In this document: positions 7,101 to 62,900 of the stretch, one piece after another
How positions within the stretch are numbered: the first letter of the stretch is position 1
Layout: the number at the start of each line of letters is the position of its first letter
Source of the DNA: Fimbriosthenelais zetlandica
Lineage: Eukaryota
Assembly: GCA_977030845.1 (NCBI GenBank)
Contig: OZ365111.1
Location: forward strand, 15,934,001-15,998,000
DNA length: 64,000 nucleotides
Direction: 5' to 3'
Notes under the pieces: generated by a model
Databases searched by the model: none
Told to the model about the DNA's origin: nothing
The model's input: the letters and a program-made list of their open reading frames with translations, nothing else
Made by a program: the position numbers and the translations under genes

Positions 7101-10100
7101 TAGGATCATGGGATACCTGCATCTGATAGTTTTAGCAAATGGTGCATACAATTTCTTTATGGAAATATCTAAAACTATCTTTGACATTATACAACAACAT
7201 ATTATCAGAAGTAGATCATATTCTTATAGATCTGCCTAGGCCAAATTTAATGCAATGTAGGCATAATTATTTACTATTATTAGATAATATTTATAACTAG
7301 TTAAGAGTGTAATGAGAGTTTCATATTTAGGTACAATAAATAGGTATTGTATATTATTTTACTACATTTATTTCTTTTTTTCTGAGCCCGTATGTGGATG
7401 ATGTAAAATAATTATATCCATTATTATTCCGTCTGGCCATGTCAATTTTGACTATAAAATATATATGATATATATACCGGTAGGATTTGTATTTCTGAGA
7501 AATCTACTGAGAGACACAATTAAAGGCAACATAAAATGGCTCCATTGTTATCTCCATGATCTATAGAGATCATAAATTAATCAAACACACCTGTTGCCCT
7601 GCAAATAAAAGCATCCATGACTCAGTATTTCTGATTTATTTTCTTATCTTTTTTCGTGAATTATTATTGCACATGTGAGTTTGTGAAACACAAACCATGT
7701 ATGTCAACATGGGGTGCACACAACATGCATGTGCACACCATGACCATCATGTGCACACCATGACCATCTTTATAAAGCATTTTCCTGTTCATGCATTATA
7801 AGACCTAGCCATTTTTTGCAGACATGTAATGTATACCGAATTTGCCCTGAATAATGTCAAAATATAAAACCATATGAAAGTTTTTATAATTATATTTTAT
7901 AATTAATATTATAGATGTTTTTCTAACGATAATACAGAAGTTTTTCTACCTACCGTTTAATGTTGAGTCATCTGTTTCGTTCCTTCTCTTCACAGCTGCA
8001 ACCTCAGAGGTGGCACTCTTCAGAGATTGGCCTCCTTGTCCCTTCGAATTTTTCCCTTTTTCATTCTTATCCGTTCCTTGAGCCTTCCTTTTATTCCGAC
8101 TGTCATCTTTCTTACCCTTAATCAGGTTTTTGGAATCCCTTTTAGTAATGGGTTTCGGAATTACTGGCTTTCCACTGGACCTCAGAATCTTTGCTTTTCC
8201 CACATTACTTCCACTCTCGGCAGAGGAATCACTTTCAAACCCAAAATCTGTCTCTTCGTAATTTGTTACCGTTGTTCCATCAGCCCATGTGCGTCTACGA
8301 GCTCGAGTATTGAAAATTTTAACAACCAGTCCTTTTTTACCTGTACCAGGCTCAGTACGAAGCCGTTTGAGGATGTTGTTCCCCTTTCCTGACGGACCCT
8401 TCTTTTTCCTCGGACCAGCCTCTTTCTTTCCCTTTTCACTTAGGCCAGAAACTTTATGTTGAAAACGTTTTGTTACTTTGGTAGGTCTTCCATATCTCTT
8501 TGTGGGTGGAGGTTTCTGGACTCGATCAGCGCCGGCATCCTTCCCATGGGATTCAGTCTTATTTTCCTCCTCGTCTTCCTTTTCTGATTCCTGTGATTTT
8601 ATGTTATTAGGATCTAAACAAGTCCGGCTACTCAATCTAACAATGAGTGTTTTTAACCTGGGCATTTCAGGTTCCCTTCTTTTGCATATATTCGAGCTAG
8701 GGGCGTCCTCTGTGTCTGGATTGGGCCCATTGATTTTACTTTTTGCCTCTGGTTCATCGTGCTTTGCCTCGAGTGATTGTATTGATTTATTCATTGATTC
8801 CGTGCAGGTATCATTGTCCTTCAAAGATTCAGAAACATCAACAATCTTTTCCCTAGAACTTAACAGTGAGTCCTCTGCTTGTTCAGGGTTGCTTTGTGGG
8901 TTGGTTCGAGTGTTTTCTAGCAATTTCTGGTCAGGCTGCGATGGTTTATTAGACATTGACAGTTCATGGGTACAATGACGTGCCTGTGACGTGTCTGTGA
9001 CTTCCATTTCAGGCTGCTGTTTTCTCTCATTACATCTATCTATCTCTTGCTCACTTGTTGAGTTAGATGTTTTGTCATTCAGTATGGATTGTGTAGGGGT
9101 AGACCTATTTCCATTGGCTGCTGGTTTAGAACTTTTGTCATTCAGTATTGAGGATTGTGTAGGGGTATTTCCATCCACTGCCATACTAATATCCTTGGAT
9201 GAATCCTTTTCTCCTGAGATGGGATGAAGGGAATCTCTATTATTTCCCAGTTCAGCACCATTTTGTACCTGGTTACATGGCGGGGTGCTCCTGTTGAGGG
9301 ATGGGACTGAGGCAGTAGATACATCATGTTTCACACAGCCGTCACTCAGTGTCTCTAGTGCTGCATCTTCTTCTCTCATCTCTGATTGAACTCTGTTGTC
9401 CATATTCAATACGGCTTCATTTGTTGCTGATGATGATGATGATTTCTGGAGTGGGGTTGAATAAATTTCGCCTGTCATTTCTGAATTCTCTACTACATCC
9501 CTACTTTCATCAATAACTAAAACAGGGTCAGTATCCACGTCAATGTAAGTGTCTACATGGGTTAAATCACATGTGAACGGTGCATTGTTCAGATTGTTGT
9601 ACTCTTCATGTCTCAAGGACATTACACAGTCAATCTTTAATGTAAGAGGGTCAACTGTCCTGTCAGGAATTGTACTACTTCCGGAGTCAGCACCTGGGTT
9701 AATTTCTTCAAATGTGTCCGTGTTGTATACAGTGGAAACCTCGCCTGAAGATGTATTAATTTCAGTACCAGGTTCTTCTAAGTTTTTCCCTGGTGAAATT
9801 TGTAAATTAGTTGCATCTTCACCTCCTTTCTGAGACACTTCTTCAGTTACTTTGCAGTCATAAATTTCATCTACAGTTGGTTCTGTAGCCCCCTGGGAAA
9901 CCATTTCCTTCTGATTTTCGTCGGAAATTTCTATCGATTCATCTACATTAGCAACTTTTTCACCGACTACTTTCTTCTTTGGATCGTGAATGTGTTCATT
10001 TATGCCAACAATTTTTGAACTTTTGTCCAATGTTGACATATTAATGTCAAACTCATCTTTTTCTAAGTTCACAGCACTGTCCAGTGATTTATTAATTCCT

Positions 10101-13100
10101 TTTCCTTCGGGCAGTTCGTTCATATTCACAGGTAGTCTATTGCTAGATGTTTGCACTGTGGAATCACCTGACATTGTGTTTTCTGTCAAATCTATGTGTG
10201 GCCCTTGGTCCTCAACAGCTCTACTTATCCCCATTAGTGAATCAATATTTGCTTCCAATTGATCTCCAATTTTATCCTTTGTGATCTCCACGTTTCGTAT
10301 TGTAGTTACGGTTTCATTCTCATCCGAAGTCTGTCCTTCTGCTGTTTTAAGGGTGTCTGTTTTACTCTGAGCTATATCATTGTCGTCACCCTGAGGGGAT
10401 ATCACTGATTTTTCATCAGATAAACTTTTAATATTTTCCTTTGATGCTGCATCAGTTTTTATTTGGGGACCTTCATCATTCATCCTTTTCTCTGACATCT
10501 CTGGATAAAAACTTGGCATCTCAGCTTGTAATGTTACCTCACTTGTTTTTTCTTCAGTCTCATTTCCAGTTTCCTTTACTTCGGGGCATGGTAATGACTT
10601 AACTTCTTGATAAAGAACCCTAGATGTAACTTGGCGTGACGAGTAGTTCCCTATTTCTTTATTTTGAGTATCTGTTTCTGGTTCAACTCTGAAGATAGTT
10701 TTAACTTCTTCCTTGGATTCGGATGGGATAATCTGTAATTGTTCATTTTTCAATTGACATTGAAACAGAACTTGCTCTGTCGATTTGATCTCCCTATTTG
10801 TTACAAGCTCTGTCTTCATTGTCTCTTCTTTTTTTACGCACTTTTCTCCTGAACTATTTTTAACCTCTCTCTGAAAGCCCTTCAATGTGTCTTTGACTTC
10901 CTCTTTAGCATCTATATTTGATTTAGCTGTGGTTGTAGGAAGTTGCTTATCATTGCACAAATCCATTACAAGCATCTGAACACTCCCTTCCTTTCCATGA
11001 CTTTCTGTTTTTTCTTCAGCCTTAATTTTGTTTTCCCCTTCAATCTTTTCGTCCACTGTCTTCTGTGGAGTCCATTTTTCAGGTCTGGTCTCTACAAGTT
11101 CTACATTTTCCTCTGAGTGTTGAGAGAACAGCTTTTGGTCCTGGCCTATTGTACCCAGTGTTGATTCTGATGGTTCATAAACTCTCAGTACCTGTACTGT
11201 TGTTCTTTGTTTTGGTGGAGATTTCTCCACCATAATGATACTTTCTCCTGGCCCAGAACACATATGAAGCTCCAAATCATCATCTTGCTCTTCACTCACT
11301 GATTTGTCATTGATTTGATCTTTGCGTTCCTCTTGGTTAGTTTTCTTGTTGAGTTCTGCATCACTTGATTCTTGGTGGGCACTAGATGTTGTATCAATTG
11401 CCATTTCATTTATTGCTGTATGGCCAGTAAGGGTTGCCACAAACATGTTTTTGTCAATGTTCACATTTGTCTGCTGATTTACCTGGTACTGGCCTAATTG
11501 AACAACTTCTGCTGCACTTTCTTCCTGTTCTGCTGCAGTTTCCGCAGGAACACTGCTCTTTATTTCATTGATCGTTGCAACAGATGGGACTGTCTGTTCA
11601 TTAGATGTGCCATCAGCATTATGTGATGAGTTCTCTTGGCCAGCCTTTCTATCTTTACTAGTCTTTTGACAGTTTTCAAAGTCATGTTCAAGGCCTTTTA
11701 AAGGATTTGGTTTGGTATTTGCGTCAACCTGAAGGGATGCATCTGTCAACTGTGTGTTGACCTCTTGGGCTACAATTTCCATTCTGTTCACATTATCTGG
11801 ATTCAGTTGCTGTTGCTCATCATCTGTGTTTGGGTGGGTGTCTTCACTTGAGCTAGGAGAATTGTTTTTGGTTATCACCCAATCCTCAGAGTCTTCTACT
11901 ATATCAATATCATGTGGTGGTAATGGCAAGGGAGTAAGAGTATGATTCAAAAGCATAACAGGATGAGGTTTCTTTATATTGAGAGCCATATCAGTTGGTG
12001 CAATGTGTGTTACTTGATGTTTGTCCCACTTCTTCACTTGTGTTGTCTCCACAACACTCGAACCTTCCTCAGTTACATGAAGTTTTGCATCATTTTCTTT
12101 AATATTCCTGTGTTTGCTTGGAGAACCGCCTGTTCTAGTGTGACCTTGAGTTTCACTATTGCCATGTTTCAACACCTCCATACCATCTTTGATGTGCAAT
12201 TTATCTTTTGGGGGATTCAAGTTTGACTGTTCTTCTGTCAAATCATGTGCCACTGTAACAGGTGGTGTTGTAAGCAATTTAGGACTCTGACTCTTAAACA
12301 TTTTCGATGCAACTTCCAAGTCAAATCCCTTTTCTTTTGGTACATTAACGTCTTCTTGACTTGGGATTGTTATCAAATTCTTTATTTGCTGTTCACGACC
12401 ATCACATGAAATTTGAACTTTTGAGGGAGTAGCCCCTCTGACAATTTCAGAATCCTTTGTCTTTGAGCCTTGCGGTGTTTGGGCAATGATTACTTTGATT
12501 GATTTTGGTTCATGTGATAAAATATCAACCTTGGCATTTGTGGGGTTAGAATTACAGCGTTCTTCTTTCATGGAAGCAGGATATTCCTTCTTCTTAAATC
12601 TAAAATCCAATAAACTTGATTTTTTAGAAGTAATTGTGCTTGGGTACTTCATCAGCTGTACAGGCTCAATCCTTAATGGACTACTCGGTCCGATTTTATT
12701 TTTTTTAGTTAAAGAACCATTGTCCTTTCCTGTTGCATCAGTAAGAGCGATCTGTGGGGAGCCTGAAGGGGAAGACGATATGTCTCGGTTTTCTTCTGAT
12801 GCCCCTTGTTGAGCATTATCAGATATATCATGTTTCATTCTTGACTCGCTGCTATCAGCCTGAGACATTTCACTCTTGTTCTCAGGGATTGTATTCAATG
12901 TACTAGTATCAGAAATACTTACAGTTGACTCAGATTTGCATCTGCCCAAGCTTAAACTTTTATGTTGTCCCTCTGATTTCTGTTTGTCTATATGTCCTGA
13001 TCTATACCTCTCACTAGATTTATGTCTGCTATGAGTGGAATGAGTTTTTGTGTGAGATGATTTTGAGCGGTGTCGATGATGTGATGCAGATGAAGAGGAG

Positions 13101-14383
13101 GAATGGAAAGAGGAAGCTGGCTTCTGTTTTGAAATGTCTAAGTGGGATTTTCCCGATTCCTGTTTCTTCTCCTTATCAGTCTGTCTTCGATGATGTGCAT
13201 CCGACTTCTCTGTTATTTCTTTACTTCTGCTTCCAAGAGCTGACGATTTGTTAGGCGCAGTGCGTCCCTGATTGCCTATGCTTGGAATCTTTTGAGTGGA
13301 ACTTTTACTTTTTTCATATTTAGATGCAGTTGATTTACCATCTATGAGTTTAGGCATGTGTGGGTCCAGGTTCACAGTTTTGGTTTTCCCCTTCTCAATG
13401 ATAGACTCTCTGGATCCTGTTCTTCTGTCACTGCTTGTCACAATCTTGACTGACTGATTCTTCGATGGCCACCTAACCAATTTTGGAAGACTATCTGAAT
13501 CGTCATTCAGTCTCTTTCTCGATGAAACCATTGCTGATGCCTTTGAGTCATCTCTGTCTTTACTGAATGATATCTGAGGTGTCCTGATGGTTGCTTTCGG
13601 TGCTGAAATTAAAACAATAATAAAATTGCTAGGTTCAAGCCGGATACACATTGACAAAAGAATGTTAGTTATTTTTACTGTTTCGAATGTGAATTCACTG
13701 TAGAGTTAAATTAACCTACCTTCATTTAATTTGTCTTTTTGGACATCTTTCACCCTTTTCTTTCCTGTTGAATGCTTCACTCCATAACTCACATAGTCAC
13801 TGTGTTTCGGAGGCTTTCGTTCATGAGGCTTTCTTGTTTGTATATTGTATGTTTGTATGTTTTTTCTAAGGTTATCACCTGATTGTTCCTTTGTTGAAGC
13901 CTCTGATTTTAGCTCAACAACATGATGTTCTTCTTTCATTCTATCCATAGTTTTACTAATCCTATCAAAATGGGTTTTCTGATAATTGGCTATCAGTTCG
14001 GGTATGCGTCTTTGAAAATTAGCCGGTAGTTTTTCCAAGAGAACTATTGGCATGGGTATGTCATTACCTCCTTGATGCATTGCTCTGGCAGTTCTTTGGT
14101 GCACTAAGGCCTGTCTCTTGATTTCAGCATGGTAAATCCTCTTTGATGTACAACCATTGGTGGACCCTTGGACAGGTTGACAGAAAACAGTTTCAGCAAT
14201 TTTCCCTAACTTGTGCCAGTGATTTTTAGTGAAAGTTACTTCGTTCAACCAGTTTTGTTTTGTTCTACTCACTAAGACATTTGAACACGTTTCCGCAGAA
14301 GGGGAATTAGTCCTTTCAGGCTCCTGGACAGACTTGAGACGTTCGGGAAAAGACCCTTCCTCAGTGTATTGGCTGTGCCTTTG
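1..14383 (-). CDS. Large multi-exon uncharacterised low-complexity (S/K/E/T-rich, then P/Q-rich) protein, probably nuclear; incomplete at both ends
   Basis: Phase-consistent GT-AG chain in transcription order: 13720-14383 (phase 0 to 1), 7954-13602 (1 to 1), candidate 8-nt exon 7591-7598 (1 to 0), 3441-3574 (0 to 2), 2944-3095 (2 to 1), 1687-2092 (1 to 2), 1308-1573 (2 to 1), <1-1126 (1, open to the window edge). I checked the last exon has no stop in 374 codons. Basic NLS-like clusters (PPKRKR, KRKK, RKKK). No recognisable folded domain. Confidence 0.8.
5540..6866 (+). mobile_element. 5'-truncated L2/CR1-group LINE (RT C-terminal half, 3' UTR, (TAA)n tail), antisense in an intron of the minus-strand gene
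   Basis: ORF 5590-6726 has RT motifs LDLSAAFDTLDH, GVPQGSVLGP, YADDTQ, LNGDKTE, SRLDYCN. The 3' UTR has an agcgctttt...agagcgct stem, followed by the TAA-repeat tail at 6849-6866. Confidence 0.93.
7954..13602 (-). CDS. Giant 5649-nt internal coding exon of the minus-strand gene (core of the 1903-aa ORF)
   Basis: ORF 7946-13657. Acceptor ttttaatttcag|CACCGAAA at 13602/13603 and donor AACG|gtaggt at 7954/7953. The phase matches the donor of the upstream exon (GAAG|gtaggt at 13720). Confidence 0.88.
13720..14383 (-). CDS. Internal coding exon of the minus-strand gene
   Basis: ORF 13706-14407, bounded by acceptor ttttcaacag| and donor GAAG|gtaggt; 664 nt. Confidence 0.8.
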
Positions 14384-14637: not shown

Positions 14638-14787
14638 NNNNNNNNNNNNNNNNNNNNNNNNNNNNNNNNNNNNNNNNNNNNNNNNNNNNNNNNNNNNNNN
14701 NNNNNNNNNNNNNNNNNNNNNNNNNNNNNNNNNNNNNNNNNNNNNNNNNNNNNNNNNNNNNNNNNNNNNNNNNNNNNNNNNNNNNNN
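14638..14787. other. Assembly gap (150 N)
   Basis: Run of N. Confidence 0.99.
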
Positions 14788-35300: not shown

Positions 35301-38300
35301 ATAACAGCAAGTATATAACATAGTAAAGTAAATTAAGAACACGATGAAACTTAGACAGCAATAAAAACAGTGAATGGAGGTTTAAATAGCTAGGCGTGGA
35401 TCAGCATGTAAAAAATTGGAAGTTGTTGTGTTACTTCTAATAAAGTCTGTTATTTTTATGACTGCTTTGAAAACATCAATATCCCGTAACGCTTGAGTTT
35501 CTCTGGGTAGTTGGTTCCACATGTCAGAACCAGTAAAATGTGGACATTTTTTGTATTTTTCACACTTAGGAATCTCTACTTTGAATTTAATTTTGCCAGC
35601 ACTTCTAGTTTCAACTGCGCTAGTGGCCGGAGGAGGTTCAAGCTGGTTTGGGTTTTTGGATTTTTTATACATGGCACACACTGTCTGTCTAGCCGACCTA
35701 GTTTCAAGGTATTCAAGTTTAGCCTTAGTGTGTAAAAATTCGGTCGATGTTAGCCTATCCATTTGGAAGATAATTTTTAGGGCACGGTTTTGGACTCTCT
35801 GGAGTTTAGCCTTAATAGTTTCAGTCAGAAGGGTAAAACAGGCATTACCATATTCAAGCAGTGGTAAGATAGTAGCTTTATACATAAGTAAGGCTGTTTT
35901 CTCACCGATTGAATGCCTTAACTTGGATAAAGTAATAAGTTTTGCATTGGCAGATCTCATGGCATGTCTAGTATGCTCTTCTAGGTTTAGTTGTGAGTCA
36001 AGATGGAGTCCTAAATACTTGTATTTGGTCACCAGTTCGATCGGCGAACCATTAACATTAATTTGGTTACACTTGTTATGATTGGCTATCTTACGGGTAT
36101 TAAGCTTCGTCCCATTTGTACAGGATCAGCCAGTAGACACATCTTTCTTTCTGAAACAAATCCCTCATTTTGTCTTTTTTTGTATAATTTTAGGTAATTT
36201 GTGCAGGTGTACAGGCTATCGTCCTATCCTCGATGGTTTCAGCACATTTACCAAGGTACGGAAATTATAGTACACGTTTAAAAGAAAACAATATTGAAAG
36301 ACACTTTTTAATTGTTTTAATTCCAACAATCCTGTAGGCCTTATCATTTAAACAATTACATTTCGTAATATCAATATTAGTATACTTGTTATATAATCAG
36401 AAAGGATTTTAGTACATTTTCTCATTTCTTCTGATCAAATTTTATCTATAATATGTTCCAATTATTCCTTTTTGGTTGCAATTTAAAGGAGTTCCAGTGC
36501 GCCATGGGGGACCAATGCTGCAAGAACAACAAAAATAAAGAAAGTGTTCCTGTAGGTTTGAACTGTAATTTCCGTTAATTCCACTTTGCTGAATTATCCA
36601 TTGTTAATTTTTTGTCACAGAATTAATGTATATGATTTTAAATGTCTTGGTTTTCAGGTTCCAGACAAGAAGTTGTATGATTTCTCCAAGTTTAGCCCAT
36701 ACGATCCAACACAGGAGCCAATCTTTCCCAGTGAACTTCAAGTAAGTTATTCCTATTAGGGGTAGAAACGTGTATTAAGTTTAAGTTTAAGGGGCAATAC
36801 ACTAGCAATGTTATCAAAGCGCTGTTGCATTCTGGTTACACACCTGCATTAATTATTTAATTAAATAAGAAAAAGGGTTTTTTTTAATTTCAAAGTTTTA
36901 ATCCCAATATTATTTTTACTTACGTCATAAATATAATATATTTTAGGGTGTCAAATTAATATGGAGGCCTATATGCTTTTCCCCAGATTTCTGGGTTATC
37001 AAAAATGGTCCTGATTAGATGCATTGTCACTACTTCTAGATGATTTATTATATTCGGAATGACTATAGGAGTGCTCGCTTGCACTAAATGACTATTGTGT
37101 ACTATTGAATCACAAAGATTTTTGACAGCACGAACAGAATATATGTGTATAATATTATATAACCGGGTCGTTGTCCCATAAATGTACGATCTAGTACAAA
37201 ATGTTACTGATCATTGGATGAATTGAGATGGACAGACATCACGACCGTTTATATAACATATTTATTTTAACGTTATGTACAGTTCCTGGAAACAGACACG
37301 CCATAAATACGACTTGGCATTAGTAATAACATAAATTATTTTTCACCAACCGATTCCTGTCCTATAAAATTAACAATAGACCTGTGGGAGGGGCTGGAGA
37401 GTAGGTAAGAGATATAGGGGAGGGTATTATACATACGGAATAGACAAATATAGGAGGATGAGATTGACAAGGATGGTAGATAGATATATTATAGGTACAG
37501 ACATTATTAGCAATATACATGCAGCAATGTATCTAGGCATATTTTACCTAAGGAGGACTGGGAGAGAACTGGACTGGATCCGTCACCGGATATAATAATT
37601 ATGTTGTTTATGTTGGAAAGAGGAGAGGCAAAAAGCAGGGAGAATGGTAGAAAGGGAGAGAAATTATGTTTTAGTACTCCGTAATCTCATGGTGATGTGT
37701 CTTAATATTATGAATGTCATTTTAATTTGTAGGTTGACAGCACTTGTGACACTCAATCACTGAAATTTTCTAGTGACAGGGTTACATGGTATCGCCCCGT
37801 TTCACTGGAGGAATTTGTTTCTCTAAAATTCCAACATCCTGAAGCCCGAATAATCGTAGGCAACACCGAAATAGGTAAAATAAAAAAAAATAAAAAAATG
37901 CCCTAAAATGTGATCGCAAGCTCGGAATTTAAATTTAGGTTCAGGTATCTCTGCATGGGATTATTGGTGCATTGATCATTGCTCCTTTTTTAAATGACTA
38001 GGTGTGGAGATTAAATTCAAGAACATGCACTACCCCGTCATGATTGCGGCCAGCCATATACCAGAACTCAAAGGTGTGAGGCATACAGATAGTGGGATAG
38101 AGTTTGGAGCCTCCGTCAGCCTTGCATCAATGGAACACCAGCTGAGAAAAGCCATTGAGAAATATCCCGGTTCGTAGATTTCACCTATATTTTAGACTAA
38201 CCCATTTAAACCGAGGTACTTAATTCTGGTTGTATTCTGGTTATATAATTATTAGGGGGAACTTGTATAACAAATTTCAGAAAGATTCATCAAGGGGTTG

Positions 38301-41300
38301 TTAAGATACAGCATGGGTCGAAAATGACCCCTCTAGGTACATAGGGGGTTCAATTATACTAGGTATTGGAGGGAGATAGCCCCTTATTAACGACCAAGTA
38401 ATTAATATATATGCACTACCTTAGATCAATTATAATAGGAGGAAGGAGATAACCCCTGAACGACCAAGTGAAGAAGTAAAATATCGATTACTTTAGATCA
38501 CTTATAATAGGTAGTGGAGGGCAGATATCCCCTAAACGACCATGAGGGAAAACTAGTCATCATGTAATTGCTGCAATTACAGATATTTCATTTCACTTGT
38601 GGGCATGTTAATGGGGGTAGGAAAACCAGTGGAAGCATATGGAATTGAAATCTTGAGCCCAAACCACCCTGACTTACTTCTCATCCACCATAGATCAGTG
38701 GGCTACAAGCCATGCATGTGTCTAGCATGGCTCAGAGGGTTAAGGTCTTGGTCTTGAGATCCAATGGTAGTTGCAAGTGTGGGTTCGAATCCTGCTGTTG
38801 GCTTTTTTTTGTTGCCGATAATTTAAATTTTTTGTTTTTAATTAACACCCTTAATAAAATATGGATTGTCACAATATTTTATATTTGGATGTATTTGTCC
38901 ATCCCTCACATGTGTGAAGCATTTTTTCCATTTTTTACCCAAAGATGCCATGACGTCATTATGATGTCAATTATGACGTCAATTAAAAAATTGAAAACAT
39001 CATGATGACAAGAAGCCTCTAAAGAGTCCATATATGCACCTTGTCATTTGCCTGGACAATCCATTGTGACAATCCATATTTTATTGAGGGGGTTAATTAA
39101 AAAAAAAAATTAAAAAAAATATGGGAAAAAACCAAGCCAACAGCAGGATTCGAACACACACTTGCAACCACCATTGGATCTCAAGACCAACACCTAATAC
39201 CACTCGGCCATCAAGACTCCACAAACAAGCATGGCTTGTAGCCTAGAGGTATAATGACTTGGTCTTGAGATCCAATGGTGGTTGCAAGTGTGGGTTCGAA
39301 TCCTGCTGTTGGCTTGTTTTTTTCCCATATTTTTTTTTAAAAATTTATTTTTAATGAACAACCTTAATAAAATATGGATTTTCACAATATTTTATATTTG
39401 GACTTATCTGACCATCCCTCACATGTTTGAAGCATTTTTATCCACTTTTTACCAAAAGATGCCATGACGTCATTAAGATGTCATTATGACGTCAATTAAA
39501 AAATCATGATGACAAGAAGCCTCTAAAGGGTCCATAATGCAACTTGCCATTCACCTGGAATAACCAGTGACATGATTTTTCGTAGGCCAGATTTATGAAA
39601 AAACGGCCAATACATTTGCCCAGTTATGCCTGATTTTACATCATTTTATGACATGACATGACATGATATGAAAGTCAAACCTCCCACATTTGACCTCTTC
39701 TGACCATGCCTTACCTGTGTACCCAAAACCAGAATCCTGTCTCTAGTAGAAAGTCGATTTTAAGCCAATTGAAAATAGTAACCATGGTAATCTGTGATAT
39801 TTATGGCCAATAATGTCCAAGCCAGATCTAAGGATTTATTTTCCCCAACTTTCCCAACTCCCATTAATTTATAGGAGTTACAAATCATTGAATGACTGTC
39901 AAAGTTCACAATCTATATCATGAGCCAAACCACCCCTGACTTACTACTCATGCATCACATACAGATCAATTGGTACTGGGCTACAAGCCATGCTTATGTG
40001 TGCTGTCTCCATGGCCCAATGGATAAGCTGTTGGTCTTGTGATCCAATGGTGGTTGCAAGTGTGGGTTCGAATCCTGCTGCTGGCTTTGTTTTTTCCCAT
40101 ATTGAAATTTTTTTTTTTTTTAATTAACACCCTTAATAAAATATGGATTGTCACAATATTTTATATTTGGACATATATGACCATCCCTCACATGTTTGAA
40201 GCATTTTTTCCATTTTTTACCCAAAGATGCCATGACATCGTTAAGACGTCAATTATGACGTCATTATGACGTCAATTAAAAAATCAAACTAATCATGATG
40301 ACAAGAAGCCTCTAAAGGGTCCATAATGCAACTTGTCGTTCACCTGGAATAACCAGGCTAGGAGTAGATAGCATTTAAGTGATTGCATTTCATGTTAATT
40401 AGCTAATTAACAGACAGTAATTAGGCCACAGGTCAAATGATGGTACCAAATGATAGGGCATCAAGTACATGTTACCTGATACCAGTGACATGATTTTTGG
40501 TTGGCAATATTTCTGAAAAAAACAGCCAATACATTTTTCCAGTTATGCAAGTTTGACGTCATTTTATGACATGACATGACATGACATGAAAGTCAATCCT
40601 GCCACATTTGACATCTTCTGACCATGCTCTACCTGTGTACCAAAAACCAGATTCCTGTCTCTATTAGAAAGTCGATTTTAAGCCGATTTAAAATTTGTCT
40701 AACTACAACAATAATAAGAAGAAGAAGAAGAATAATAATAGTGTACAGAAACGCGGTGAAAAACTTGATTTCATTTCTCCCTGAGGAGAAATGAAATAAT
40801 AATGTATCCACTACCTTAGATCAATTATAATAGGTAGTGGAGGGAGATAGTCCCTAAACGACCACGTGAAGAAGTAAAATATCGATTACCTTAGATCAAT
40901 TATAATAGGTAGTGGAGGGAGATAGTTCCTAAACGACCAAGAGAGAAATCAAAATATCAATTGCCTCAGATCAATTATAATAGGTAGTGGAGGGAGATAA
41001 CCCCTAAACGACCAAGTGAAGAAGTAAAATATCAATTCCCTTAGATCGATTATAATAGGTAGAGGAGGGAGATAACCCCTAAACGACCAAATGACCAAGA
41101 CTACCTATTACATTATATTACAGGTCTAATAAGCCTCCACACCCATTGGGGAAAAATATTGATGACAATGTACTAATGTTTGCAGAGTACCAGACACGGA
41201 CTTTTGATGCTGTTGTTGAAATGTTACGGTGGTTTGCTGGACATCAAATTAGGAATGTAGCTGTGAGTATCAAACTGCTAAAATACTTTTTACCGGGGTC

Positions 41301-50850: not shown

Positions 50851-52763
50851 TATAGATTATGTCGGAGATATGGTATCTAAATAAGAGATAACGCGAGTCT
50901 ATCCGAGTCTCGGAGTCACACCGAGTCTGACTGAGTCTGACTGATTAGACTGACTCTATGTAGATGATCGCACATAAATTGGTCATGTATCTTCAATATA
51001 TTATAGGCTATCTAACCAATGGTTAAATAATTATCCTGTTTGTACACACTGTAAGAAGATATCTACTTTGACAAATACTTAAGCTCATTATAACACTAGT
51101 ACAATTCTCGGAAAATGAAAGCCTATTGAAGGCCTAATTTTATTATAATCCGAAAATTTTGTAGATATATGTTTGCATGAAAATGATTTGGATAGTTGAA
51201 ATTACTGGTCTAGAGTTAAGAAAATAGAAAAGCAATTTACTTTGAATAGGCTGGACTATAATTACTCAGTTTTGTGACAGGTGACATATTAAAAAGGATT
51301 TTTATTATGGAATGAGTCCTGTTTGAGGCCTGTCCTGGCCCTTTTGCACATTGCTGATGAGTGTCACATTAGGCCTAATTATTAGCCTAGACTTACGGTA
51401 GCCTTAGAAATAGAATGACATTGTCGGCGGAAGGGGTTACGGGTCTTGTTTTATAACAATAAATGCACTGCATTACTTAATCATGGTACCGTAATTGCAT
51501 TTTCTCCCTTCTGAAACGGATCCCTGGTATACGGGTATTGAGCAAGATGCAGTGATCACATGTTGGTCTGAATGGTATGTATAGGCCTACTCGTTGATCT
51601 GCGCTAGTCTAAATTGTTCATGTATAGGCTGGCTATATTAGGCCTAAATATTATTATGCATTTTGTTAGAAATGATAGGCTATGTTAGAAATAATAATTG
51701 TGATAATATTATTATGGATACATTTTTGTTAAGAAATGTCCTAAAAATCGGTCCAGTCAAATAAATCACTATGTCAATCATGAATCTTTGTTTTGGTTCT
51801 GATATCCTGGAATTTATCCATTATCACAACGGTTTAAATTGGTTTTCTAGCTCCCACAGGAAATATTAGGGTGAAACGTTTTTCTGTTTTACATTTTCCC
51901 CTCCTACATTTTCATATGACGCATTGAAATAAAAAAAAACTTATTCCATGTGGAGAATGTGCCATAGCTTCTATGTGATCAAAGTATGCCTCAAAGTAGT
52001 CTCATTAACTTGAGGTAAGGGGTATTCACCTGTAAAGTTCTAAGGTGTATACCCCCATAACTAAGGATGATGCATGGAGGTATGAATTTTTAACTCTAAG
52101 TCTATGTCAGCTGCTATTTATTCACCATAATTATAACTTTACTTTAATTCAGTGCATGTAATATATCATTATATTTGCATTTTTTCTTTTTTATTTCCAA
52201 ACGCTTCAGAATAATTTTTGTTTGTTGAAAATATATCTTTTTAGCGTGTCAGCAAATAATTCCTCATCTTGCATGTTTATCGACACCACTTCCCGAAGAG
52301 CACAAACCACCGAGACCCACCTCCATCTTCCTCTTCTTCATGGGTGAAATATCTGTAATAAATGTCCCAATATATAATAAGCCTATCTATCATAATTTAG
52401 GAGGGACGCTCTCTCCCTTCTCTTCATCCAATGCTGGAAATTCAAAAATGGTGCATTTTACAAGGTGTCTAAACCATGATCGATTTTAATGTTATTCCTT
52501 AATAAATATGTCATAACAGTCCTGCTCTCAACTATTATTTTTTCCGTTTAGAACGTAATTTTACACCCCGCCCATCTCCAAACCCCATCACCAATCAATA
52601 TTCCCAATCCGTCTAAATACATCCGATATGCCTTCCAATCAATGTTGGAAAAATATTCAACCTTCCGCACTCCGCTCCCCTCGGCAACTCAAACGGAAAA
52701 AAACAAATCGGTACTGGTAAGCTATTTGCATATTTAGCTACCCATGGAGCAGAAAAATCGTTG

Positions 52764-52829
52764 ACGACACAGGGAAGCGAACCCCGGCCACTCGCATTGC
52801 GAGTCAGTGTCTTACCTCTAGACTACCTA
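52764..52829 (-). pseudogene. tRNA-like Pol III head (Glu/Asp/Gly-like) at the left end of the foldback
   Basis: tagtctagaggtaagac (A box/D-arm) and ggttcgcttccc (B box); the anticodon arm is non-canonical. Confidence 0.6.
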
Positions 52830-54620
52830 TGCACAAGTACACACCACTTCAAATTTAGCTTATACCGCCCAGGACAAGGCTGAAACACAATGTATAGATT
52901 TTTTTTGACACCCAGACCCCCCGGCCCCAACTGGCCCCCAACCTCCACCCAAATCCCTATGTCAACCCCCAGCACCCCCAGCAACTCCTTCCAAAACCCC
53001 AGCGCGATTAGAAACGGTGAACATGTCAAAATCCCTTGGAATAGCCCACTGCGTAGGTACTGTCCATAGGCGCCAATGTTAAAAATTGTCTAGCCCCCCG
53101 GACCCCTCACCGGCTCCCAACCTCCATGTCTACCCCCAGTACCCACCACAACCCCCTCCCAAAATTTCAGCCCGATCCTATGGTGCTAACCTGTCTAAAT
53201 CCATTGGATTCTGCAAAAGTGTCCCGCCCATAGACGCAATGTTAAAAATCACTCACGATTACATGGATGTGTGCTACAAAGCCGGTTTACCAATCCACTC
53301 AAATCGGCTTATTCTCGACCTAATACATATTATTTTCACTCAACTCCACGGTTATGTATAGCGTATGACCTCTACTGATAAAGCCCAAAAGAGCCGAGAC
53401 GAAAAACTAGGAAAACCCCGATTTCTGCGAGTTGACAAATCGGTTATGTGTATACAGGCCTATAATTTGGCCTTTTAAAAACCTTAACAGCGCCCTCTCA
53501 CTAAAAGTCGAAAAAGTTGTATAACTCTGTAAATAATGGGTCTAAAATTACAATTCAAACGGATTATTCTTAGTTGGAAGCACCTCCAGGTATCTATCTG
53601 GTTTTTGTGCAACTAAAATTAATTTAAAATTTTAAAATTTGAGGTCTTTAGCATTGGACTCTATGGAAGGAGGAGGCCAGCGCGACAAAGCGACCCGAGA
53701 TTGGCAGCGGCAAAAAGATGAACTATTCTACTATGATCTACCATAGAGGTGTAGGAAGCTCCTACACCTCTATGATTCAGGCTATGCTGGCTGGAGCATA
53801 GTAGTTCACGTTTCCGCCGCTAGGACATCGCCACATGCGGTCAGGCGCCTCCTTCCATTGACTCCAATGCTATTTGAAGAAATTCAGTCCATTTTGAAAA
53901 TCCGAAATTTTAAATGAATTTTATTGGAACAAAAACTACATAGACATCTGAAGGGTCTCCCAACTAAGAATAATCCGTTTAATTTGTAATTTTAGACCCA
54001 TTATTTACGAAGTTATTAAACTTTTTCGACTTTTAGTGAGAGGGCGCTGTTAAGGTTTGTATACGTGAGGCCGATTTGCCAATGTCGCAGAAATCGGTTT
54101 TTTTCTCGTTTGCCGTCTCTGCCCTTTTGAAATTTATTAGTAGATGCTATAAGTTACACATAACCGTGGACTTGAGTGAAAATAACATGTTGTAGCTAGA
54201 AAAAGAGCCGATTATAGTGTACTGGCAAACCGGCTCAGTAGCACACATCCATGTAGCCTAATCGTGAGTGACTTTTAACATTGCGCCTATGGGCGGTGCA
54301 CTTTTGCAGAATCCAGTAAATTTAGACATGTTAGCCTTTTCGAATCGGGCTGGATTTTTGGGAGGGTGTTGTTTGGGGTGCAGGGGGTAGACATGACTGA
54401 TGAGGGTGAGGGTGGAAGTTGGGGGCCGGGGAGGGGTCCGGGGGGCTAAAGAATGTTTTAACATTGGAGCCTATGGCCGTATGGGCAGTACCTACACAGT
54501 GGGTTTTTCGGATTAAGCCTTGTCCTGGGCGGTTCAGGCTAAATTTGAGTGGATGTAGTGAACTGATCCGGGTAGGCCCATAGATAGTTGTTACTATATC
54601 TATGCGGGTAGGCCTACCAT

Positions 54621-54687
54621 GTAGTCCAGAGTAGAGGTAAGACACTGGCTTTCAACGTGAGAGAACTGGGTTCGATTCCCCGCCATG
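54621..54687 (+). pseudogene. tRNA-like Pol III head at the right end of the foldback
   Basis: gtagtccagagtagaggtaagacactggctttcaacgtgagagaactgggttcgattccccg. Confidence 0.6.
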
Positions 54688-54829
54688 CAAATAATTGTTT
54701 CTCCCCTCGGCATCTCAAACGGAAAAAGACCAAATCAATACTGGTAAGCCATTTGCATATTTAGCTACCCATGGAGCAGAAAAATCGTTGTTTATTCTTT
54801 AGAGAGGCTCGTAACTCTACTATCCTTGA

Positions 54830-54972
54830 TTCATGCATCGCGCCATCCGCCATTACTGCTCCGCACCGACGACGATACTCTTCCCTGATTGGTCAATAAT
54901 AATAATGTCAAATTTGCCGCGGGACAGTGTCATGGTGGACAACATTCGTCAGATTTGGTTTTGGCTACTTGC
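54830..54972 (+). promoter_or_regulatory. Candidate promoter and non-coding first exon of the DMAC1-like gene
   Basis: CpG-rich; CCAAT box (ctgattggtc ~54886); donor GC|gtaagt at ~54973; acceptor tttttcag just before the ATG at 55454. Confidence 0.45.
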
Positions 54973-55453
54973 GTAAGTGAATAATTGTTAGAAAACTACT
55001 GAATTCAAACTGTAATCGAGACAATATACGTACTGATTCAATTAAAAGTATATGATTTGTCAGAATATGTAAAAATTAGTACGAAAAACAAGCAGATAAG
55101 CTTGGAATCATAAGCTAACCATACCTGACACATGCCGGTCACGGTCTTGCCTATGATGACCATACGGTAGCGGCATGGGCTTGACTAACTACCGCCTAGT
55201 ACCGGCACTGCGGTAGGCCTACTTCCACTTCTATGTGATGACTTATCTCTTGCAGTCTTGGCCTGGGCCGGTACCGGGCTACTGGGACCGTACTGAACCC
55301 ATAGTAGCACTAGGACCCTGTGGTTGAATAAATTCATTTATCATTTTTATGATTCATTTTTACAATAGGCTTACCGGTATGCCTTATTTATGTAGGCCTA
55401 AAATGTATGTCGAAAATGACAGGAATATACCGTAGGCTATACTTTTTCAGGTC

Positions 55454-57066: not shown

Positions 57067-57145
57067 TTTTTATACCCACTGATAGGGACTCGAACCTAAG
57101 CCTGGCTCGCTTAGAAAACCAGAGCTAGAAGCCCACGCTTCAGAT
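57067..57145 (-). mobile_element. tRNA-derived SINE head fragment
   Basis: Reverse complement contains the B box ggttcgagtccc preceded by tRNA-like stems. Confidence 0.4.
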
Positions 57146-59974: not shown

Positions 59975-62900
59975 CTCCACTTCTGGCAGGGGTTCCTTGA
60001 TCTCGTCAGGCATGAGGGCTTGCTTCCCATACAGCTGGTTGGAGAAGGCAAGGTTCTGGAAAAAGGTAAAATGTCAAATTTTAATGTTAAGCAATAATCA
60101 TTATAAGGGGATTCATCTTTTCTTGGAAAGGCTATTTGGGGTCTGATCTTTTCTAAATTCATCAATGTTAGAATAGAATGATTTTTTCTCGAATCCTAAC
60201 AGTTTTTAAAATTAATAATTAACTGATGTCTTAATTGTATAATCTTAATTTTTGTATAAATTTTAAAGGACTAGAGATGGTTTTTTTCCTCCAAGGAAAA
60301 GGATAAGTTTTATTCCCGAAAGGATGGAAACAATTAGTTTTCCGAAAAGGGAGAAAGCAAAATATTGCCTTTCAAGGATAAGGGGAGAAAACATTTTTGT
60401 CTTTCAAGACAAGAGGAGACTATAATTTCTTTTCCAGGTATATCAATGTAACGTACCTCCTTGTATGTGCCCATACGCCTGTGATTGAAGGGCGCGTTCA
60501 TCTTCCTTCGGCGGGCCTGGAATGAAATAGGCACATTTATAAAATGGAATAAAGAACTTACATCAACCTATCAATTGCAATCTCGGTTAAATTGGGTTTA
60601 CTTCAGATCAAATTGAAATTTACTTTCTGAAAATAGTCATTTTATTTAGACCTAATAAGGCATAATAGAATTCAAATTTCAGCAAGACAATGATGAGCAA
60701 AGTAAGAATATTACAAAGCTGAGATATCATCAACCGGTCTAAGACGTGACCTTATATCAGTCAACATTTTTTATTTTAAAACTAATTGGAAAACTTATAT
60801 TTCACCATATACAACATAATACATATACCGATACAGTTCTGGCCCCATTTTCCTTTTGGACAGTCCTAAAGTTATTTAGCAGAAAAAAACTTACAAAGCT
60901 GATAATGGCGAAGAGGAGAATCAACATGGTGGCTCCAAAAACAGCGGCAATAATGCCGGTCTGGTGGCGGTGGACGAAGCCCATGAAGCCATGGTGGTGG
61001 TTGAGAGTGACGTGGCCGGTCCATCCACTCTCATCAGGCAACTGTGGGGCGTAGTGGTGGTGCACCTCCATTGTCTTGGGGACTGGGACCAAAGTGCCTC
61101 CCTGTAATTAAGAATGTTAAAACCCACCTTTTTAATACGGCTTACTGTTAGTATAGGTCGAATAAGCATTTTAGTCTAATCTGTTTATCTATTTACAGTA
61201 CTTATATCAGTCGAATGATTTATTTATGACTTTATTTATTATCCATTTATATATATAACAAATTATTCTTCAATTTATTTATCTATTTATTCATAATTTG
61301 ATAATTCATTCATTTTACATGGATCTCACCACATGCCTTTCAATGACTGGAAAAGGGAAAGCGGTTCCCCTGACTTGGCCATATTAATTTGTGGTTACAC
61401 CCTGGACCATCGTTTTCAAATATTGGCAGAAAAATTCAAAAATGCCAAAAATATCGACACCAAATGCCTGGAAAAAATAGAAGTTAAATTTAAATAACAA
61501 ACCTGGTAGTTGATCTGACAGCGTCCGTTCAGCATAAGGTACTGCACGTGGTAGACGGCTGTAGCCATGTCAGTCTCTTCATCAGAAATCACTTCAAAAC
61601 GGACCTGAATGATGTGCATCTCCCAAGGTGTGATCTCCACAATGTTAACGAACTCTTCATCCATGTGGAGCCAATGGCTGAGATGTTGATGTGCAAGCCT
61701 GTAGACAGAATAATTTATATACTTATATAGACTTAATTCAGTTTTATTTTATTTTGGAAATGAATATTACGAGGGAATAATATATACGCATGCATCGGGA
61801 ACGAAGTTAAATAGTCAATAAAATTTAAATTCCTTTTTATATCTTCAATAAGTATATAGAAGTAAGGAACCAGAACTGTTTTCTTTCTTTCTTTTTTTAG
61901 GGGGGGGGGGGGGGGGGAATTAAATGCTTAATATTCAAAGTAAATAATAAATATGGAATTTATATTAATACTTACTGCTTGATATTGCTCATATGAGGGG
62001 TTACATTCTCCAGTGAATGCGTCAACTTAAATGATCCATGGACCTTCCTTGTCTTATTGTAATCTGAAAAAAATTTAATTAACATTTTTAACGAGTGGCA
62101 AGAAATACAATTATTTCAATGCATTATTACTGGCATGTGCCCTCACATCTCAAAAGAAAGCAACCATGAATACAAAATAGTTATTTACAAAATCAGATTT
62201 TTAAAAAAAAAATTCAAATGGCAATTCCGAGAAAACTGACATCTCTGCGAGAGAAAGCAAGGGAATTTCCAGAACTTCAAGCGATTTTCCATACTTACGG
62301 CAGTCAGGCTTGGAGTAAGTCCGTGTCTCTGGGATCTCCAGACCACGGTCATCGACACACCAACACTCAACGCTGGTGGCGTCACACTGGAGTGGCTTGA
62401 AGTCGCCGCTGGCGTCACATTCCAACAGATCCAGGGCTTGTCTTTTGTTTCTGGTCCGGGAATCGAAAAGGGCGGGGCCGGGCATGAGAAGGGAGCTGGT
62501 GAGGCTGTGCAGTTCTGCTTGACGGTTGCACAAAGGTTTTCCTAGAAAAAGAAATTCCATATGATATATGGGGAAAAATGCACAGCACAATGTATGTACA
62601 AAACTATGCTTGAATAATACTTCGGAGACTGCGAATTTTTTTTCTTATCAGGGTCGGGGCCAGCTATCTCAGGAGGAGAAGGACAAATACTGTCTGCACG
62701 ATATGGGCTACTCCTCGAATGAAGGCAATGGGGAAAATGAAGGGAGTCAAAACAATCGATAAGTTCTTAAATGATTCGTTCTAGGCTGACTTACCAACAC
62801 ATTTAGGCTGGTTGGGACAGAAGTCTTTGTCACATTTCACTTTGTGCTCGGTACAGATTTCTCCCTCTGGACACTTCTCACTCTGCAAAATGAAAAGTAA

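What the first reader, a model, noticed from the sequence alone, without database searches (positions are those of the whole stretch)
52764..54687. ~1.9-kb palindrome ending in two outward-facing tRNA-like Pol III heads
Seen: 52764-53756 is the reverse complement of 53760-54687 along its whole length, roughly 75-85% identical by eye. The left arm carries an extra ~165-bp internal tandem unit. There is no meaningful ORF. Each arm terminates in a tRNA-like A/B-box cassette pointing away from the centre, so the ~900-bp body lies upstream of the tRNA head, the reverse of SINE anatomy. It sits between the XDH 3' end and the DMAC1-like promoter. Inference: a non-autonomous foldback element, or a head-to-head dimer of a hairpin-ended replicon, carrying Pol III promoters. 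It could fire transcripts into both neighbours, act as a tDNA-type insulator pair, or yield ~1-kb dsRNA. I know no named family with this layout.
Basis: partly seen in the sequence, partly recalled or inferred. Interest (0 to 1): 0.8.

Follow-up and report, generated by a model that had tools for sequence, protein, structure and literature searches.

The report
Old tRNA-tipped foldback repeat element
It is most likely an old copy of a genome-specific foldback repeat, and no function as a gene or a Pol III promoter was shown.

Summary
Positions 52764-53756 and 53760-54687 are inverted copies (nhmmer E 1e-118 to 1e-121). They are 82% identical over aligned bases and 64% if gaps are counted. They meet at a perfect 15-bp stem with a 3-nt loop. 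The left arm has two copies of a ~178-bp unit, the right arm one. No ORF has a Pfam match. Each tip is a tRNA-like module pointing outward, but both score below Rfam's tRNA cut-off (22.8 and 17.2 bits against 29). ARAGORN does not call them and neither folds as a cloverleaf. They are tRNA-derived pseudogenes that keep B-box-like motifs.

A new finding is a 90-bp direct repeat (94% identical) bracketing the palindrome. This is the topology of an insertion. The left repeat ends two bases from the left tRNA-like 3' end.

My best reading, at about 0.5, is an old non-coding foldback repeat from a family specific to this genome. Unverified notes from other windows describe the same layout. Two features do not fit canonical cut-and-paste transposition: the outermost 8 nt of the tips match at only 2 of 8 positions, and the flanking duplication is 90 bp long.

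Pol III firing, insulation and dsRNA production remain untested. No sequencing run could be listed and no other copy could be reached.

The parts
52675..52763 (.). Left copy of the 90-bp flanking direct repeat (DR1). It contains an ATTTGCAT octamer. Its last 42 nt are identical to DR2.
52764..53756 (.). Left arm of the palindrome.
52766..52832 (-). Left tRNA-derived module, pointing outward. Rfam tRNA 22.8 bits, below the 29-bit threshold. B-box-like GGTTCGCTTCC at 52773-52783. A T5 run on the minus strand at 52757-52753 lies 9 nt past its end, inside DR1.
52917..53237 (.). Two tandem copies of a C-rich unit of about 178 bp in the left arm (52917-53073 and 53094-53237). The right arm has one copy (54273-54445).
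53479..53577 (.). Best-conserved core of the left arm, with perfect runs of 40, 25 and 21 nt shared with 53960-54058. It is not a stable RNA fold (z +1.0 and +1.7).
53742..53774 (.). Centre of the palindrome: a perfect 15-bp stem with a 3-nt loop (AGC), flanked by poorly aligned sequence with 16-22-bp indels.
53760..54687 (.). Right arm of the palindrome.
53960..54058 (.). Best-conserved core of the right arm, the mirror of 53479-53577.
54553..54620 (.). Segment of about 65 bp found only in the right arm: the direct repeat CGGGTAGGCC, present twice, around a small inverted repeat. It is absent from the left arm.
54621..54683 (+). Right tRNA-derived module, pointing outward. Rfam tRNA 17.2 bits, below the 29-bit threshold. 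Exact B box GGTTCGATTCC at 54669-54679. The first T run of 4 or more downstream is at 54959.
54688..54700 (.). 13-nt linker between the right arm and DR2.
54701..54790 (.). Right copy of the flanking direct repeat (DR2). It lies about 150 bp upstream of the neighbouring gene's CCAAT box and putative first exon (about 54890-54980).

Best explanation
This is an old, non-coding, foldback-structured repeat element. It is an inverted dimer of a ~0.95-kb unit whose outer end is a tRNA-derived pseudogene. It was copied as a whole palindrome into the XDH/next-gene intergenic region, about 150 bp upstream of the neighbour's promoter, and 90 bp of the target were duplicated in the process.

Shown directly: the palindrome, the tRNA-derived tips, the variation in sub-repeat copy number between the arms, the lack of coding capacity, and the flanking direct repeat, whose inner edge lies 2 nt from the left tRNA-like 3' end.

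Inferred: that it belongs to a dispersed family specific to this genome; that the arms had already diverged when it arrived here; and that the copying step was not a canonical transposase reaction dependent on conserved tips. A wide-stagger or replication-templated insertion, or collapse of a (spacer-palindrome)n array, fits better. At this locus it is most likely inert DNA. Its B-box-like motifs could still bind TFIIIC.
For: The arms are homologous from tip to centre. The ~178-bp sub-repeat is present twice in one arm and once in the other, as in foldback TIRs. There is no ORF with a Pfam match. GC is 45% in the palindrome against 38% for the window, with mirror-image GC skew. The DR-palindrome-DR topology is that of an insertion; a local inverted duplication would not give it. 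The DRs are 94% identical and the arms 82% (Fisher p = 0.005), which suggests the arms diverged before the duplication arose. The substitution spectrum is unbiased, with 54 transitions and 56 transversions, so there is no sign of RIP or deamination. At least ten independent first-stage notes from other windows of this genome describe ~2-kb foldbacks capped by outward tRNA-like units, some in arrays and some young with 6-bp TSDs. These notes are unverified leads. A second family of repeats carrying tRNA-like modules lies in the same window.
Against: No second copy of the arms or of the DR exists in the 64-kb window. None was found in any searchable public collection. Family membership therefore rests only on unverified notes. 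The outermost 8 nt of the two tips match at 2 of 8 positions, and the outer 50 columns are the least conserved aligned part at 67%. There is no short TSD; the best candidate is an 8-mer matching at 6 of 8 positions (my reading). A 90-bp duplication is not what DDE transposases make. The dating argument is weak because DR2 lies in a promoter-proximal region and may be constrained or gene-converted.
Confidence: 0.5

Rival explanations
1. The palindrome was made locally. A host segment carrying a tRNA pseudogene was duplicated in inverted orientation by a hairpin-capped break or a replication template switch at the short central inverted repeat, and the two copies then diverged. On this reading it is not a mobile element.
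For: No other copy is in the window. The centre is a perfect 15-bp stem with an asymmetric 3-nt loop, as expected where a short inverted repeat seeds a large palindrome. The tips lack conserved terminal nucleotides.
Against: A simple inverted duplication does not leave the two flanks as a direct repeat. GC content differs from the surroundings. The same layout is reported repeatedly elsewhere in this genome, though those notes are unverified.
Confidence: 0.15
2. The unit is a ~1-kb monomer that ends in a tRNA-like 3' module and propagates through a hairpin intermediate. This could be snap-back second-strand synthesis of a cDNA primed at the tRNA-like end, or rolling-hairpin or hairpin-telomere DNA replication. 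Integrated products would then be inverted dimers and flip-flop arrays, and the tRNA-like module would be a terminus or priming signal, not a promoter.
For: The inserted block is delimited by the 3' ends of the two tRNA-like modules: 2 nt from DR1 on the left and about 10-13 nt from DR2 on the right. The centre is a short perfect hairpin with an asymmetric loop. A long, variable target duplication fits target-primed or repair-mediated insertion. Notes from other windows mention monomers with a tRNA-like unit at one end, 'flip-flop' arrays and tandem palindromes, all unverified.
Against: There is no reverse transcriptase, Rep or resolvase partner, no CCA or poly(A), and no expression data. The arms are 18% diverged, so the dimer is not a fresh hairpin product. 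Every step of the mechanism is inference.
Confidence: 0.1
3. Two independent insertions of the same ~1-kb tRNA-tipped element landed head to head, for example through a preference for inserting at its own inner end.
For: The arms are much more diverged than the flanking DR. The arms differ by several large indels.
Against: Both copies would have to begin at the same nucleotide and form a perfect 15-bp stem with a 3-nt spacer. A single 90-bp duplication brackets the pair rather than each monomer.
Confidence: 0.1
4. It is a selected functional locus. Candidates are a pair of tDNA-type insulators or Pol III units, a hairpin-RNA (endo-siRNA) source read through from XDH, or a divergent pair of non-coding genes with tRNA-like 3'-end processing.
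For: B-box matches are exact at 54669-54679 and 9/11 at 52773-52783. A ~100-nt core is nearly identical in both arms. The element lies between a gene's 3' end and a promoter.
Against: The tRNA-like modules are below threshold and do not fold. The right head has no terminator within about 270 nt. The conserved core is not structured. With 18% mismatch and many indels the dsRNA would be poor. No expression data are available.
Confidence: 0.05
5. It is an assembly artefact caused by fold-back chimeric reads.
For: Palindromes are a known artefact of long-read libraries. No reads could be laid on the region.
Against: The arms differ by 153 substitutions and 231 gap columns. A chimeric read would give near-identical arms.
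Confidence: 0.02

Closest known systems
Foldback-type DNA transposons (Drosophila FB, Galileo of the P superfamily, sea-urchin TU, C. elegans Tc4). The family descriptions are from general knowledge; Galileo as in PMC3573991.
   Same: Long inverted arms meet at the centre. The arms contain internal tandem sub-repeats whose copy number differs between arms. Non-autonomous copies have no coding capacity.
   Different: The tips here are tRNA-derived modules, not transposase-binding termini. The terminal nucleotides are not conserved between the arms. The flanking duplication is 90 bp rather than 7-9 bp. No transposase partner is known.
tRNA-derived SINEs
   Same: A tRNA-derived module with A- and B-box-like motifs is attached to a non-coding body.
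   Different: The body lies upstream of the tRNA-like module, so Pol III would transcribe away from it. There is no LINE-type tail or poly(A). The element is palindromic.
Helenus / TRIMp3: non-autonomous LTR retrotransposons with tRNA-like sequence in their LTRs (PMC10886601)
   Same: A non-SINE mobile element that carries a non-functional tRNA-like sequence in its terminal repeats.
   Different: Helenus has direct LTRs, a PBS, a PPT and 4-5-bp TSDs. Here the tRNA-like modules are inverted, the 90-bp direct repeats contain no tRNA-like sequence, and neither a PBS nor a PPT is present.
Dada DNA transposons, which target tRNA and snRNA genes (PMC3706591, PMC8869645)
   Same: A DNA element physically linked to tRNA gene sequence at its ends.
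   Different: Dada splits one tRNA gene into 5' and 3' parts in direct orientation, with a 6-7-bp TSD. Here each tip carries a near-full-length tRNA-like module and the two are in inverted orientation.
KolobokP composite-like transposons and their (LTDR-INT)n-LTDR multimers (PMC9587614)
   Same: Direct terminal repeats bracket an internal region. The multimer and monomer forms are explained by unequal crossover, which is a possible analogy for DR-palindrome-DR and for the tandem palindrome arrays noted elsewhere in this genome.
   Different: KolobokP LTDRs are about 450 or 660 bp with their own TIRs, and the element encodes a transposase and a nuclease. Here the DRs are 90 bp and nothing is encoded.

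Membership tests
Foldback-type DNA transposon | Long inverted arms that meet or nearly meet at the centre | tested here: met
   The arms 52764-53756 and 53760-54687 are separated by a 3-nt loop.
Foldback-type DNA transposon | Internally repetitive arms with variable sub-repeat number | tested here: met
   The ~178-bp unit occurs twice in the left arm and once in the right.
Foldback-type DNA transposon | Conserved terminal nucleotides at both tips | tested here: not met
   The outermost 8 nt match at 2 of 8 positions. The outer 50 columns are 67% identical, the lowest of the aligned blocks.
Foldback-type DNA transposon | Short target-site duplication of fixed length | tested here: not met
   The flanks are a 90-bp direct repeat. 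The only short candidate is AATCGTTG / AATTGTTT, matching at 6 of 8 positions.
Foldback-type DNA transposon | Multiple dispersed copies and an autonomous partner encoding a transposase | not testable with these tools
   No other copy is in the window. The genome itself is not searchable. Only unverified notes point to other copies.
Functional tRNA gene | Score above the curated tRNA threshold, with a cloverleaf fold | tested here: not met
   The modules score 22.8 and 17.2 bits against 29. ARAGORN makes no call. Folding z-scores are -0.2 and +0.6 with no cloverleaf.
tRNA-derived SINE | tRNA-like head at the 5' end, with the body and tail downstream in the direction of transcription | tested here: not met
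   Both heads point out of the element and the body lies upstream of them. There is no A-rich or LINE-like tail.
Helenus / TRIMp3 | Direct LTRs containing the tRNA-like sequence, plus PBS, PPT and a 4-5-bp TSD | tested here: not met
   The tRNA-like modules are inverted. The DRs contain no tRNA-like sequence. There is no TG..CA, PBS or PPT (criteria from PMC10886601).
Dada | Insertion inside one small-RNA gene, leaving its 5' and 3' parts in direct orientation, with a 6-7-bp TSD | tested here: not met
   The left tip covers tRNA model positions 1-71 and the right tip positions 7-64, in opposite orientation (criteria from PMC8869645).
tDNA insulator or active Pol III unit | TFIIIC/Pol III occupancy and transcripts | not testable with these tools
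   No run was listed. Only sequence motifs are available: B box 11/11 and 9/11.

The most novel reading that the evidence does not exclude
The palindrome is one product of an undescribed class of non-coding mobile element. Its unit would be a ~1-kb monomer ending in a tRNA-like 3' module, and it would multiply through a hairpin intermediate, either snap-back cDNA or rolling-hairpin DNA. Copies would then appear as monomers, inverted dimers and flip-flop arrays. The tRNA-like module would mark the terminus or priming site and would not act as a promoter.
Probability: 0.1. Interest if true: 0.85.

Novelty: new variant of a known kind. Interest (0 to 1): 0.45.

Why it matters
If the family is real, it is a foldback-structured repeat whose ends are tRNA-derived modules facing outward. 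None of the named small-RNA-linked element types I could find (SINEs, Helenus/TRIMp3, Dada) has this layout. Such a family would scatter B-box/TFIIIC-type motifs and long hairpin-forming DNA next to promoters. It could also confound tRNA gene prediction. The features seen at this copy are a 90-bp flanking duplication, non-conserved tips and boundaries at the tRNA-like 3' ends. They hint that the spreading mechanism is not ordinary cut-and-paste, which would be the interesting part. This single locus is old and degenerate, and on its own it is probably inert.

Tried and rejected
Sequencing runs: two searches, one with the whole element and one with the neighbouring ORF, listed no run. Read support, expression, small RNAs and an empty-site haplotype therefore could not be examined, and read laying was not used.

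Other copies: blastn and nhmmer of both arms and of the DR against the window found only the locus itself. Exact-pattern scans with the 24-nt conserved core and with a gapped tRNA-head pattern found nothing in metagenome, GTDB genome or viral collections.

Organism and synteny: the neighbouring 166-aa ORF has one distant relative at 35% identity. That relative's contig shows no XDH, no tRNA and no similarity to the element. A LINE RT in the window has relatives at 66% identity or less, on unnamed ENA contigs, and the atlas taxa were uninformative. The species is still unknown.

Rfam found no hammerhead or other ribozyme or RNA family in the element apart from the sub-threshold tRNA hits.

The arm ORFs are not coding. 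They have no Pfam match, and the homologous 91-aa and 68-aa ORFs are about 67% identical in protein against about 84% in DNA (my reading).

An LTR-retrotransposon reading of the DRs was rejected because there is no TG..CA, PBS or PPT. RIP or deamination as the cause of arm divergence was rejected because transitions and transversions are about equal. A structured-RNA reading of the conserved core was rejected (z +1.0 and +1.7). Extension of the inverted repeat beyond the tRNA-like tips into the flanks was rejected: the global alignment with flanks shows none.

Six literature searches found no named family with inverted tRNA-like tips.

Full report
**1. The observation**

The sequence at 52764-54687 is a genuine imperfect palindrome. 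Its centre is a perfect 15-bp stem (53742-53756 and 53760-53774) around a 3-nt loop, AGC. It folds at -28.1 kcal/mol, z = -5.5 against shuffles.

- nhmmer aligns each arm to the reverse complement of the other with E = 6.5e-121 and 7.7e-118.
- blastn gives 72.6% over 1563 columns for 53039-54509, plus separate outer blocks.
- A global alignment gives 694 matches, 153 mismatches and 231 gap columns. That is 81.9% over aligned bases and 64% over all columns.
- Transitions and transversions are equal (54 and 56), so nothing suggests RIP-like or deamination-driven decay.
- The left arm carries two tandem copies of a C-rich unit, 52917-53073 and 53094-53237, 85% identical over aligned bases. The right arm has one copy, 54273-54445.
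- The longest ORF is 104 aa and no arm ORF matches Pfam.

**2. The tips**

Rfam's tRNA model matches 52766-52832 on the minus strand at 22.8 bits (E 0.14, model positions 1-71). It matches 54621-54683 on the plus strand at 17.2 bits (E 5, model positions 7-64).

ARAGORN does not call them. Neither folds better than shuffled sequence, with z = -0.2 and +0.6, and neither minimum-energy structure is a cloverleaf.

The right module has an exact B box, GGTTCGATTCC, at 54669-54679. The left has a 9/11 match at 52773-52783. B-box-like matches are enriched in the window as a whole: 17 found against 5.3 expected, mostly in tRNA-like modules.

Downstream of the left head, a T5 run lies 9 nt past its end, but it is in flanking DNA. 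The right head has no run of four or more T for about 270 nt.

I conclude that the tips are tRNA-derived pseudogenes that keep promoter-like motifs. Pol III activity is possible but not shown. The resemblance of the T-arm to tRNA-Asp rests on my memory and was not tested.

**3.

The palindrome is bracketed by a direct repeat, 52675-52763 and 54701-54790. It has 84 of 90 identical columns, and the last 42 nt are identical in both copies.

DR1 ends at 52763, two bases from the predicted 3' end of the left tRNA-like module. DR2 starts 13 nt after the right arm. The inverted homology does not extend into the flanks.

DR-palindrome-DR is the topology of an insertion accompanied by a duplication of the target. 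A simple local inverted duplication would not produce it.

The DR contains an ATTTGCAT octamer. DR2 lies about 150 bp upstream of a CCAAT box and a putative first exon of the next gene.

**4. Relative ages**

The DRs differ at 6 of 90 columns. The arms differ at 153 of 847 aligned positions (Fisher p = 0.005). Read literally, the arms had already diverged by roughly 11-12% when the DR arose. That implies the palindrome was copied here as an existing unit with unequal arms.

The caveat is that DR2 is promoter-proximal and may be constrained, and the two DRs may have been homogenised by gene conversion. If only one DR copy evolved freely, the expected number of differences is about 8, which is close to the 6 observed. 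The dating argument is therefore suggestive and not decisive.

**5. Fit to canonical transposition**

Two features argue against an ordinary cut-and-paste event that depends on conserved tips.

- The outermost 8 nt of the tips match at only 2 of 8 positions. The outer 50 alignment columns are the least conserved of the aligned blocks, at 67%. The best-conserved part is an interior core, 53479-53577 and 53960-54058, with perfect runs of 40, 25 and 21 nt.
- The duplication is 90 bp long. The only short TSD-like candidate matches at 6 of 8 positions.

The conserved core is not a stable RNA structure (z +1.0 and +1.7). It could be a protein-binding site or a patch of gene conversion.

**6. Context**

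XDH is confirmed upstream on the plus strand by Pfam hits to CO_deh_flav_C and MoCoBD_1. Its C-terminal exon ends near 50.2 kb. The downstream 166-aa ORF matches DMAC1_Dmo2 only weakly, at 16.9 bits against a cut-off of 27.

The element is richer in GC than the window, 45% against 38%, with mirror-image GC skew.

The same window holds a second, unrelated family of repeats carrying tRNA-like modules, in an XDH intron at 38.6-40.4 kb. It has four cassettes in both orientations, two of which score 27.9 and 23.2 bits against the tRNA model. The three plus-strand cassettes are each followed by a T-run and a repeat body with a 154-nt conserved core. Repeats carrying tRNA-like modules are therefore a general feature of this genome.

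**7. Family evidence**

I could not search the genome. First-stage notes from other windows of the same genome describe the same layout again and again. They report ~2-kb foldbacks capped by outward tRNA-like units, tandem arrays of such palindromes, 'flip-flop' arrays, a family with a tRNA-like unit at one end only, and young foldbacks with 6-bp TSDs.

These are unchecked AI notes, and it is not known whether they share sequence with this copy. I use them to raise the prior for a dispersed family and not as support for it.

**8. Comparison with known systems**

Structurally this is a foldback element: the arms meet at the centre and carry a variable number of sub-repeats. It fails the tested criteria for conserved termini and a short TSD.

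- It is not a SINE, because the body lies upstream of the tRNA-like head.
- It is not a Helenus/TRIMp3 element, which has direct LTRs containing the tRNA-like sequence plus a PBS and a PPT (PMC10886601).
- It is not a Dada insertion, which splits one tRNA gene into direct halves with a 6-7-bp TSD (PMC8869645, PMC3706591).
- KolobokP multimers, (LTDR-INT)n-LTDR (PMC9587614), offer an analogy for reading DR-palindrome-DR as a collapsed array.

Six full-text searches found no named family with inverted tRNA-like tips. No Repbase or Dfam search was possible.

**9. Verdict**

The feature is real and is not an assembly artefact. My best reading, at about 0.5, is an old non-coding foldback repeat from a genome-specific family with tRNA-derived tips, copied into this intergenic site with a 90-bp flanking duplication by a non-canonical route.

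| Rival reading | Confidence |
|---|---|
| Palindrome made locally | 0.15 |
| Element propagated through a hairpin, with the tRNA-like module as terminus (the most novel reading) | 0.10 |
| Two head-to-head insertions | 0.10 |
| Selected functional locus | 0.05 |
| Assembly artefact | 0.02 |

The functional suggestions (Pol III firing, insulation, dsRNA) could not be tested, because no sequencing run was listed.

Noticed in passing
window 38600-40400: A second repeat family carrying tRNA-like modules lies in an XDH intron. It has four class-II-like tRNA-derived cassettes: 38721-38803 (+), about 39140-39211 (-), about 39232-39310 (+) and 40005-40086 (+). Two of them score 27.9 and 23.2 bits against Rfam tRNA, below threshold. 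The three plus-strand cassettes are each followed directly by a T-run and a repeat body with a 154-nt conserved core rich in TGACGTCA motifs. Copies occur in both direct and inverted orientation. The family is unrelated in sequence to the palindrome.
   Followed up: partly
window 40805-41090 (also 38350-38542): A 75-bp tandem repeat of at least 3-4 copies, 86-91% identical, lies next to the tRNA-like repeat cluster. More diverged copies lie 2.3 kb upstream.
   Followed up: no
window 54553-54620: A ~65-bp segment is present only in the right arm. The 10-nt direct repeat CGGGTAGGCC occurs twice around a small inverted repeat. It looks like a tiny insertion or a slippage duplication.
   Followed up: no
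window 52722-52763 and 54749-54790: The last 42 nt of the two flanking direct repeats, including the ATTTGCAT octamer, are identical. All six differences between the repeats fall in the first 48 nt. This may reflect constraint on a promoter element or gene conversion.
   Followed up: partly
window 5590-6726 (+) and 35382-36032 (-): At 5590-6726 (+) there is a LINE-type reverse-transcriptase fragment (Pfam RVT_1, 2e-21), whose best public relative is only 66% identical. The 216-aa ORF at 35382-36032 (-) has no Pfam match.
   Followed up: partly
window 7946-13657 (-): A single uninterrupted 1903-aa ORF, rich in Ser, Lys and Glu and of low complexity, has no Pfam match. A 233-aa ORF lies directly upstream on the same strand.
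   Followed up: no
window 62201-62590 (-): An ORF carries a thyroglobulin type-1 repeat (Pfam 2e-14), probably an exon of a neighbouring gene.
   Followed up: no
window 57086-57096 (-): An isolated exact B-box match, GGTTCGAGTCC, has no tRNA-like context.
   Followed up: yes
window 14638-14787: A run of 150 N, either an assembly gap or masked sequence. I left it as it is.
   Followed up: no
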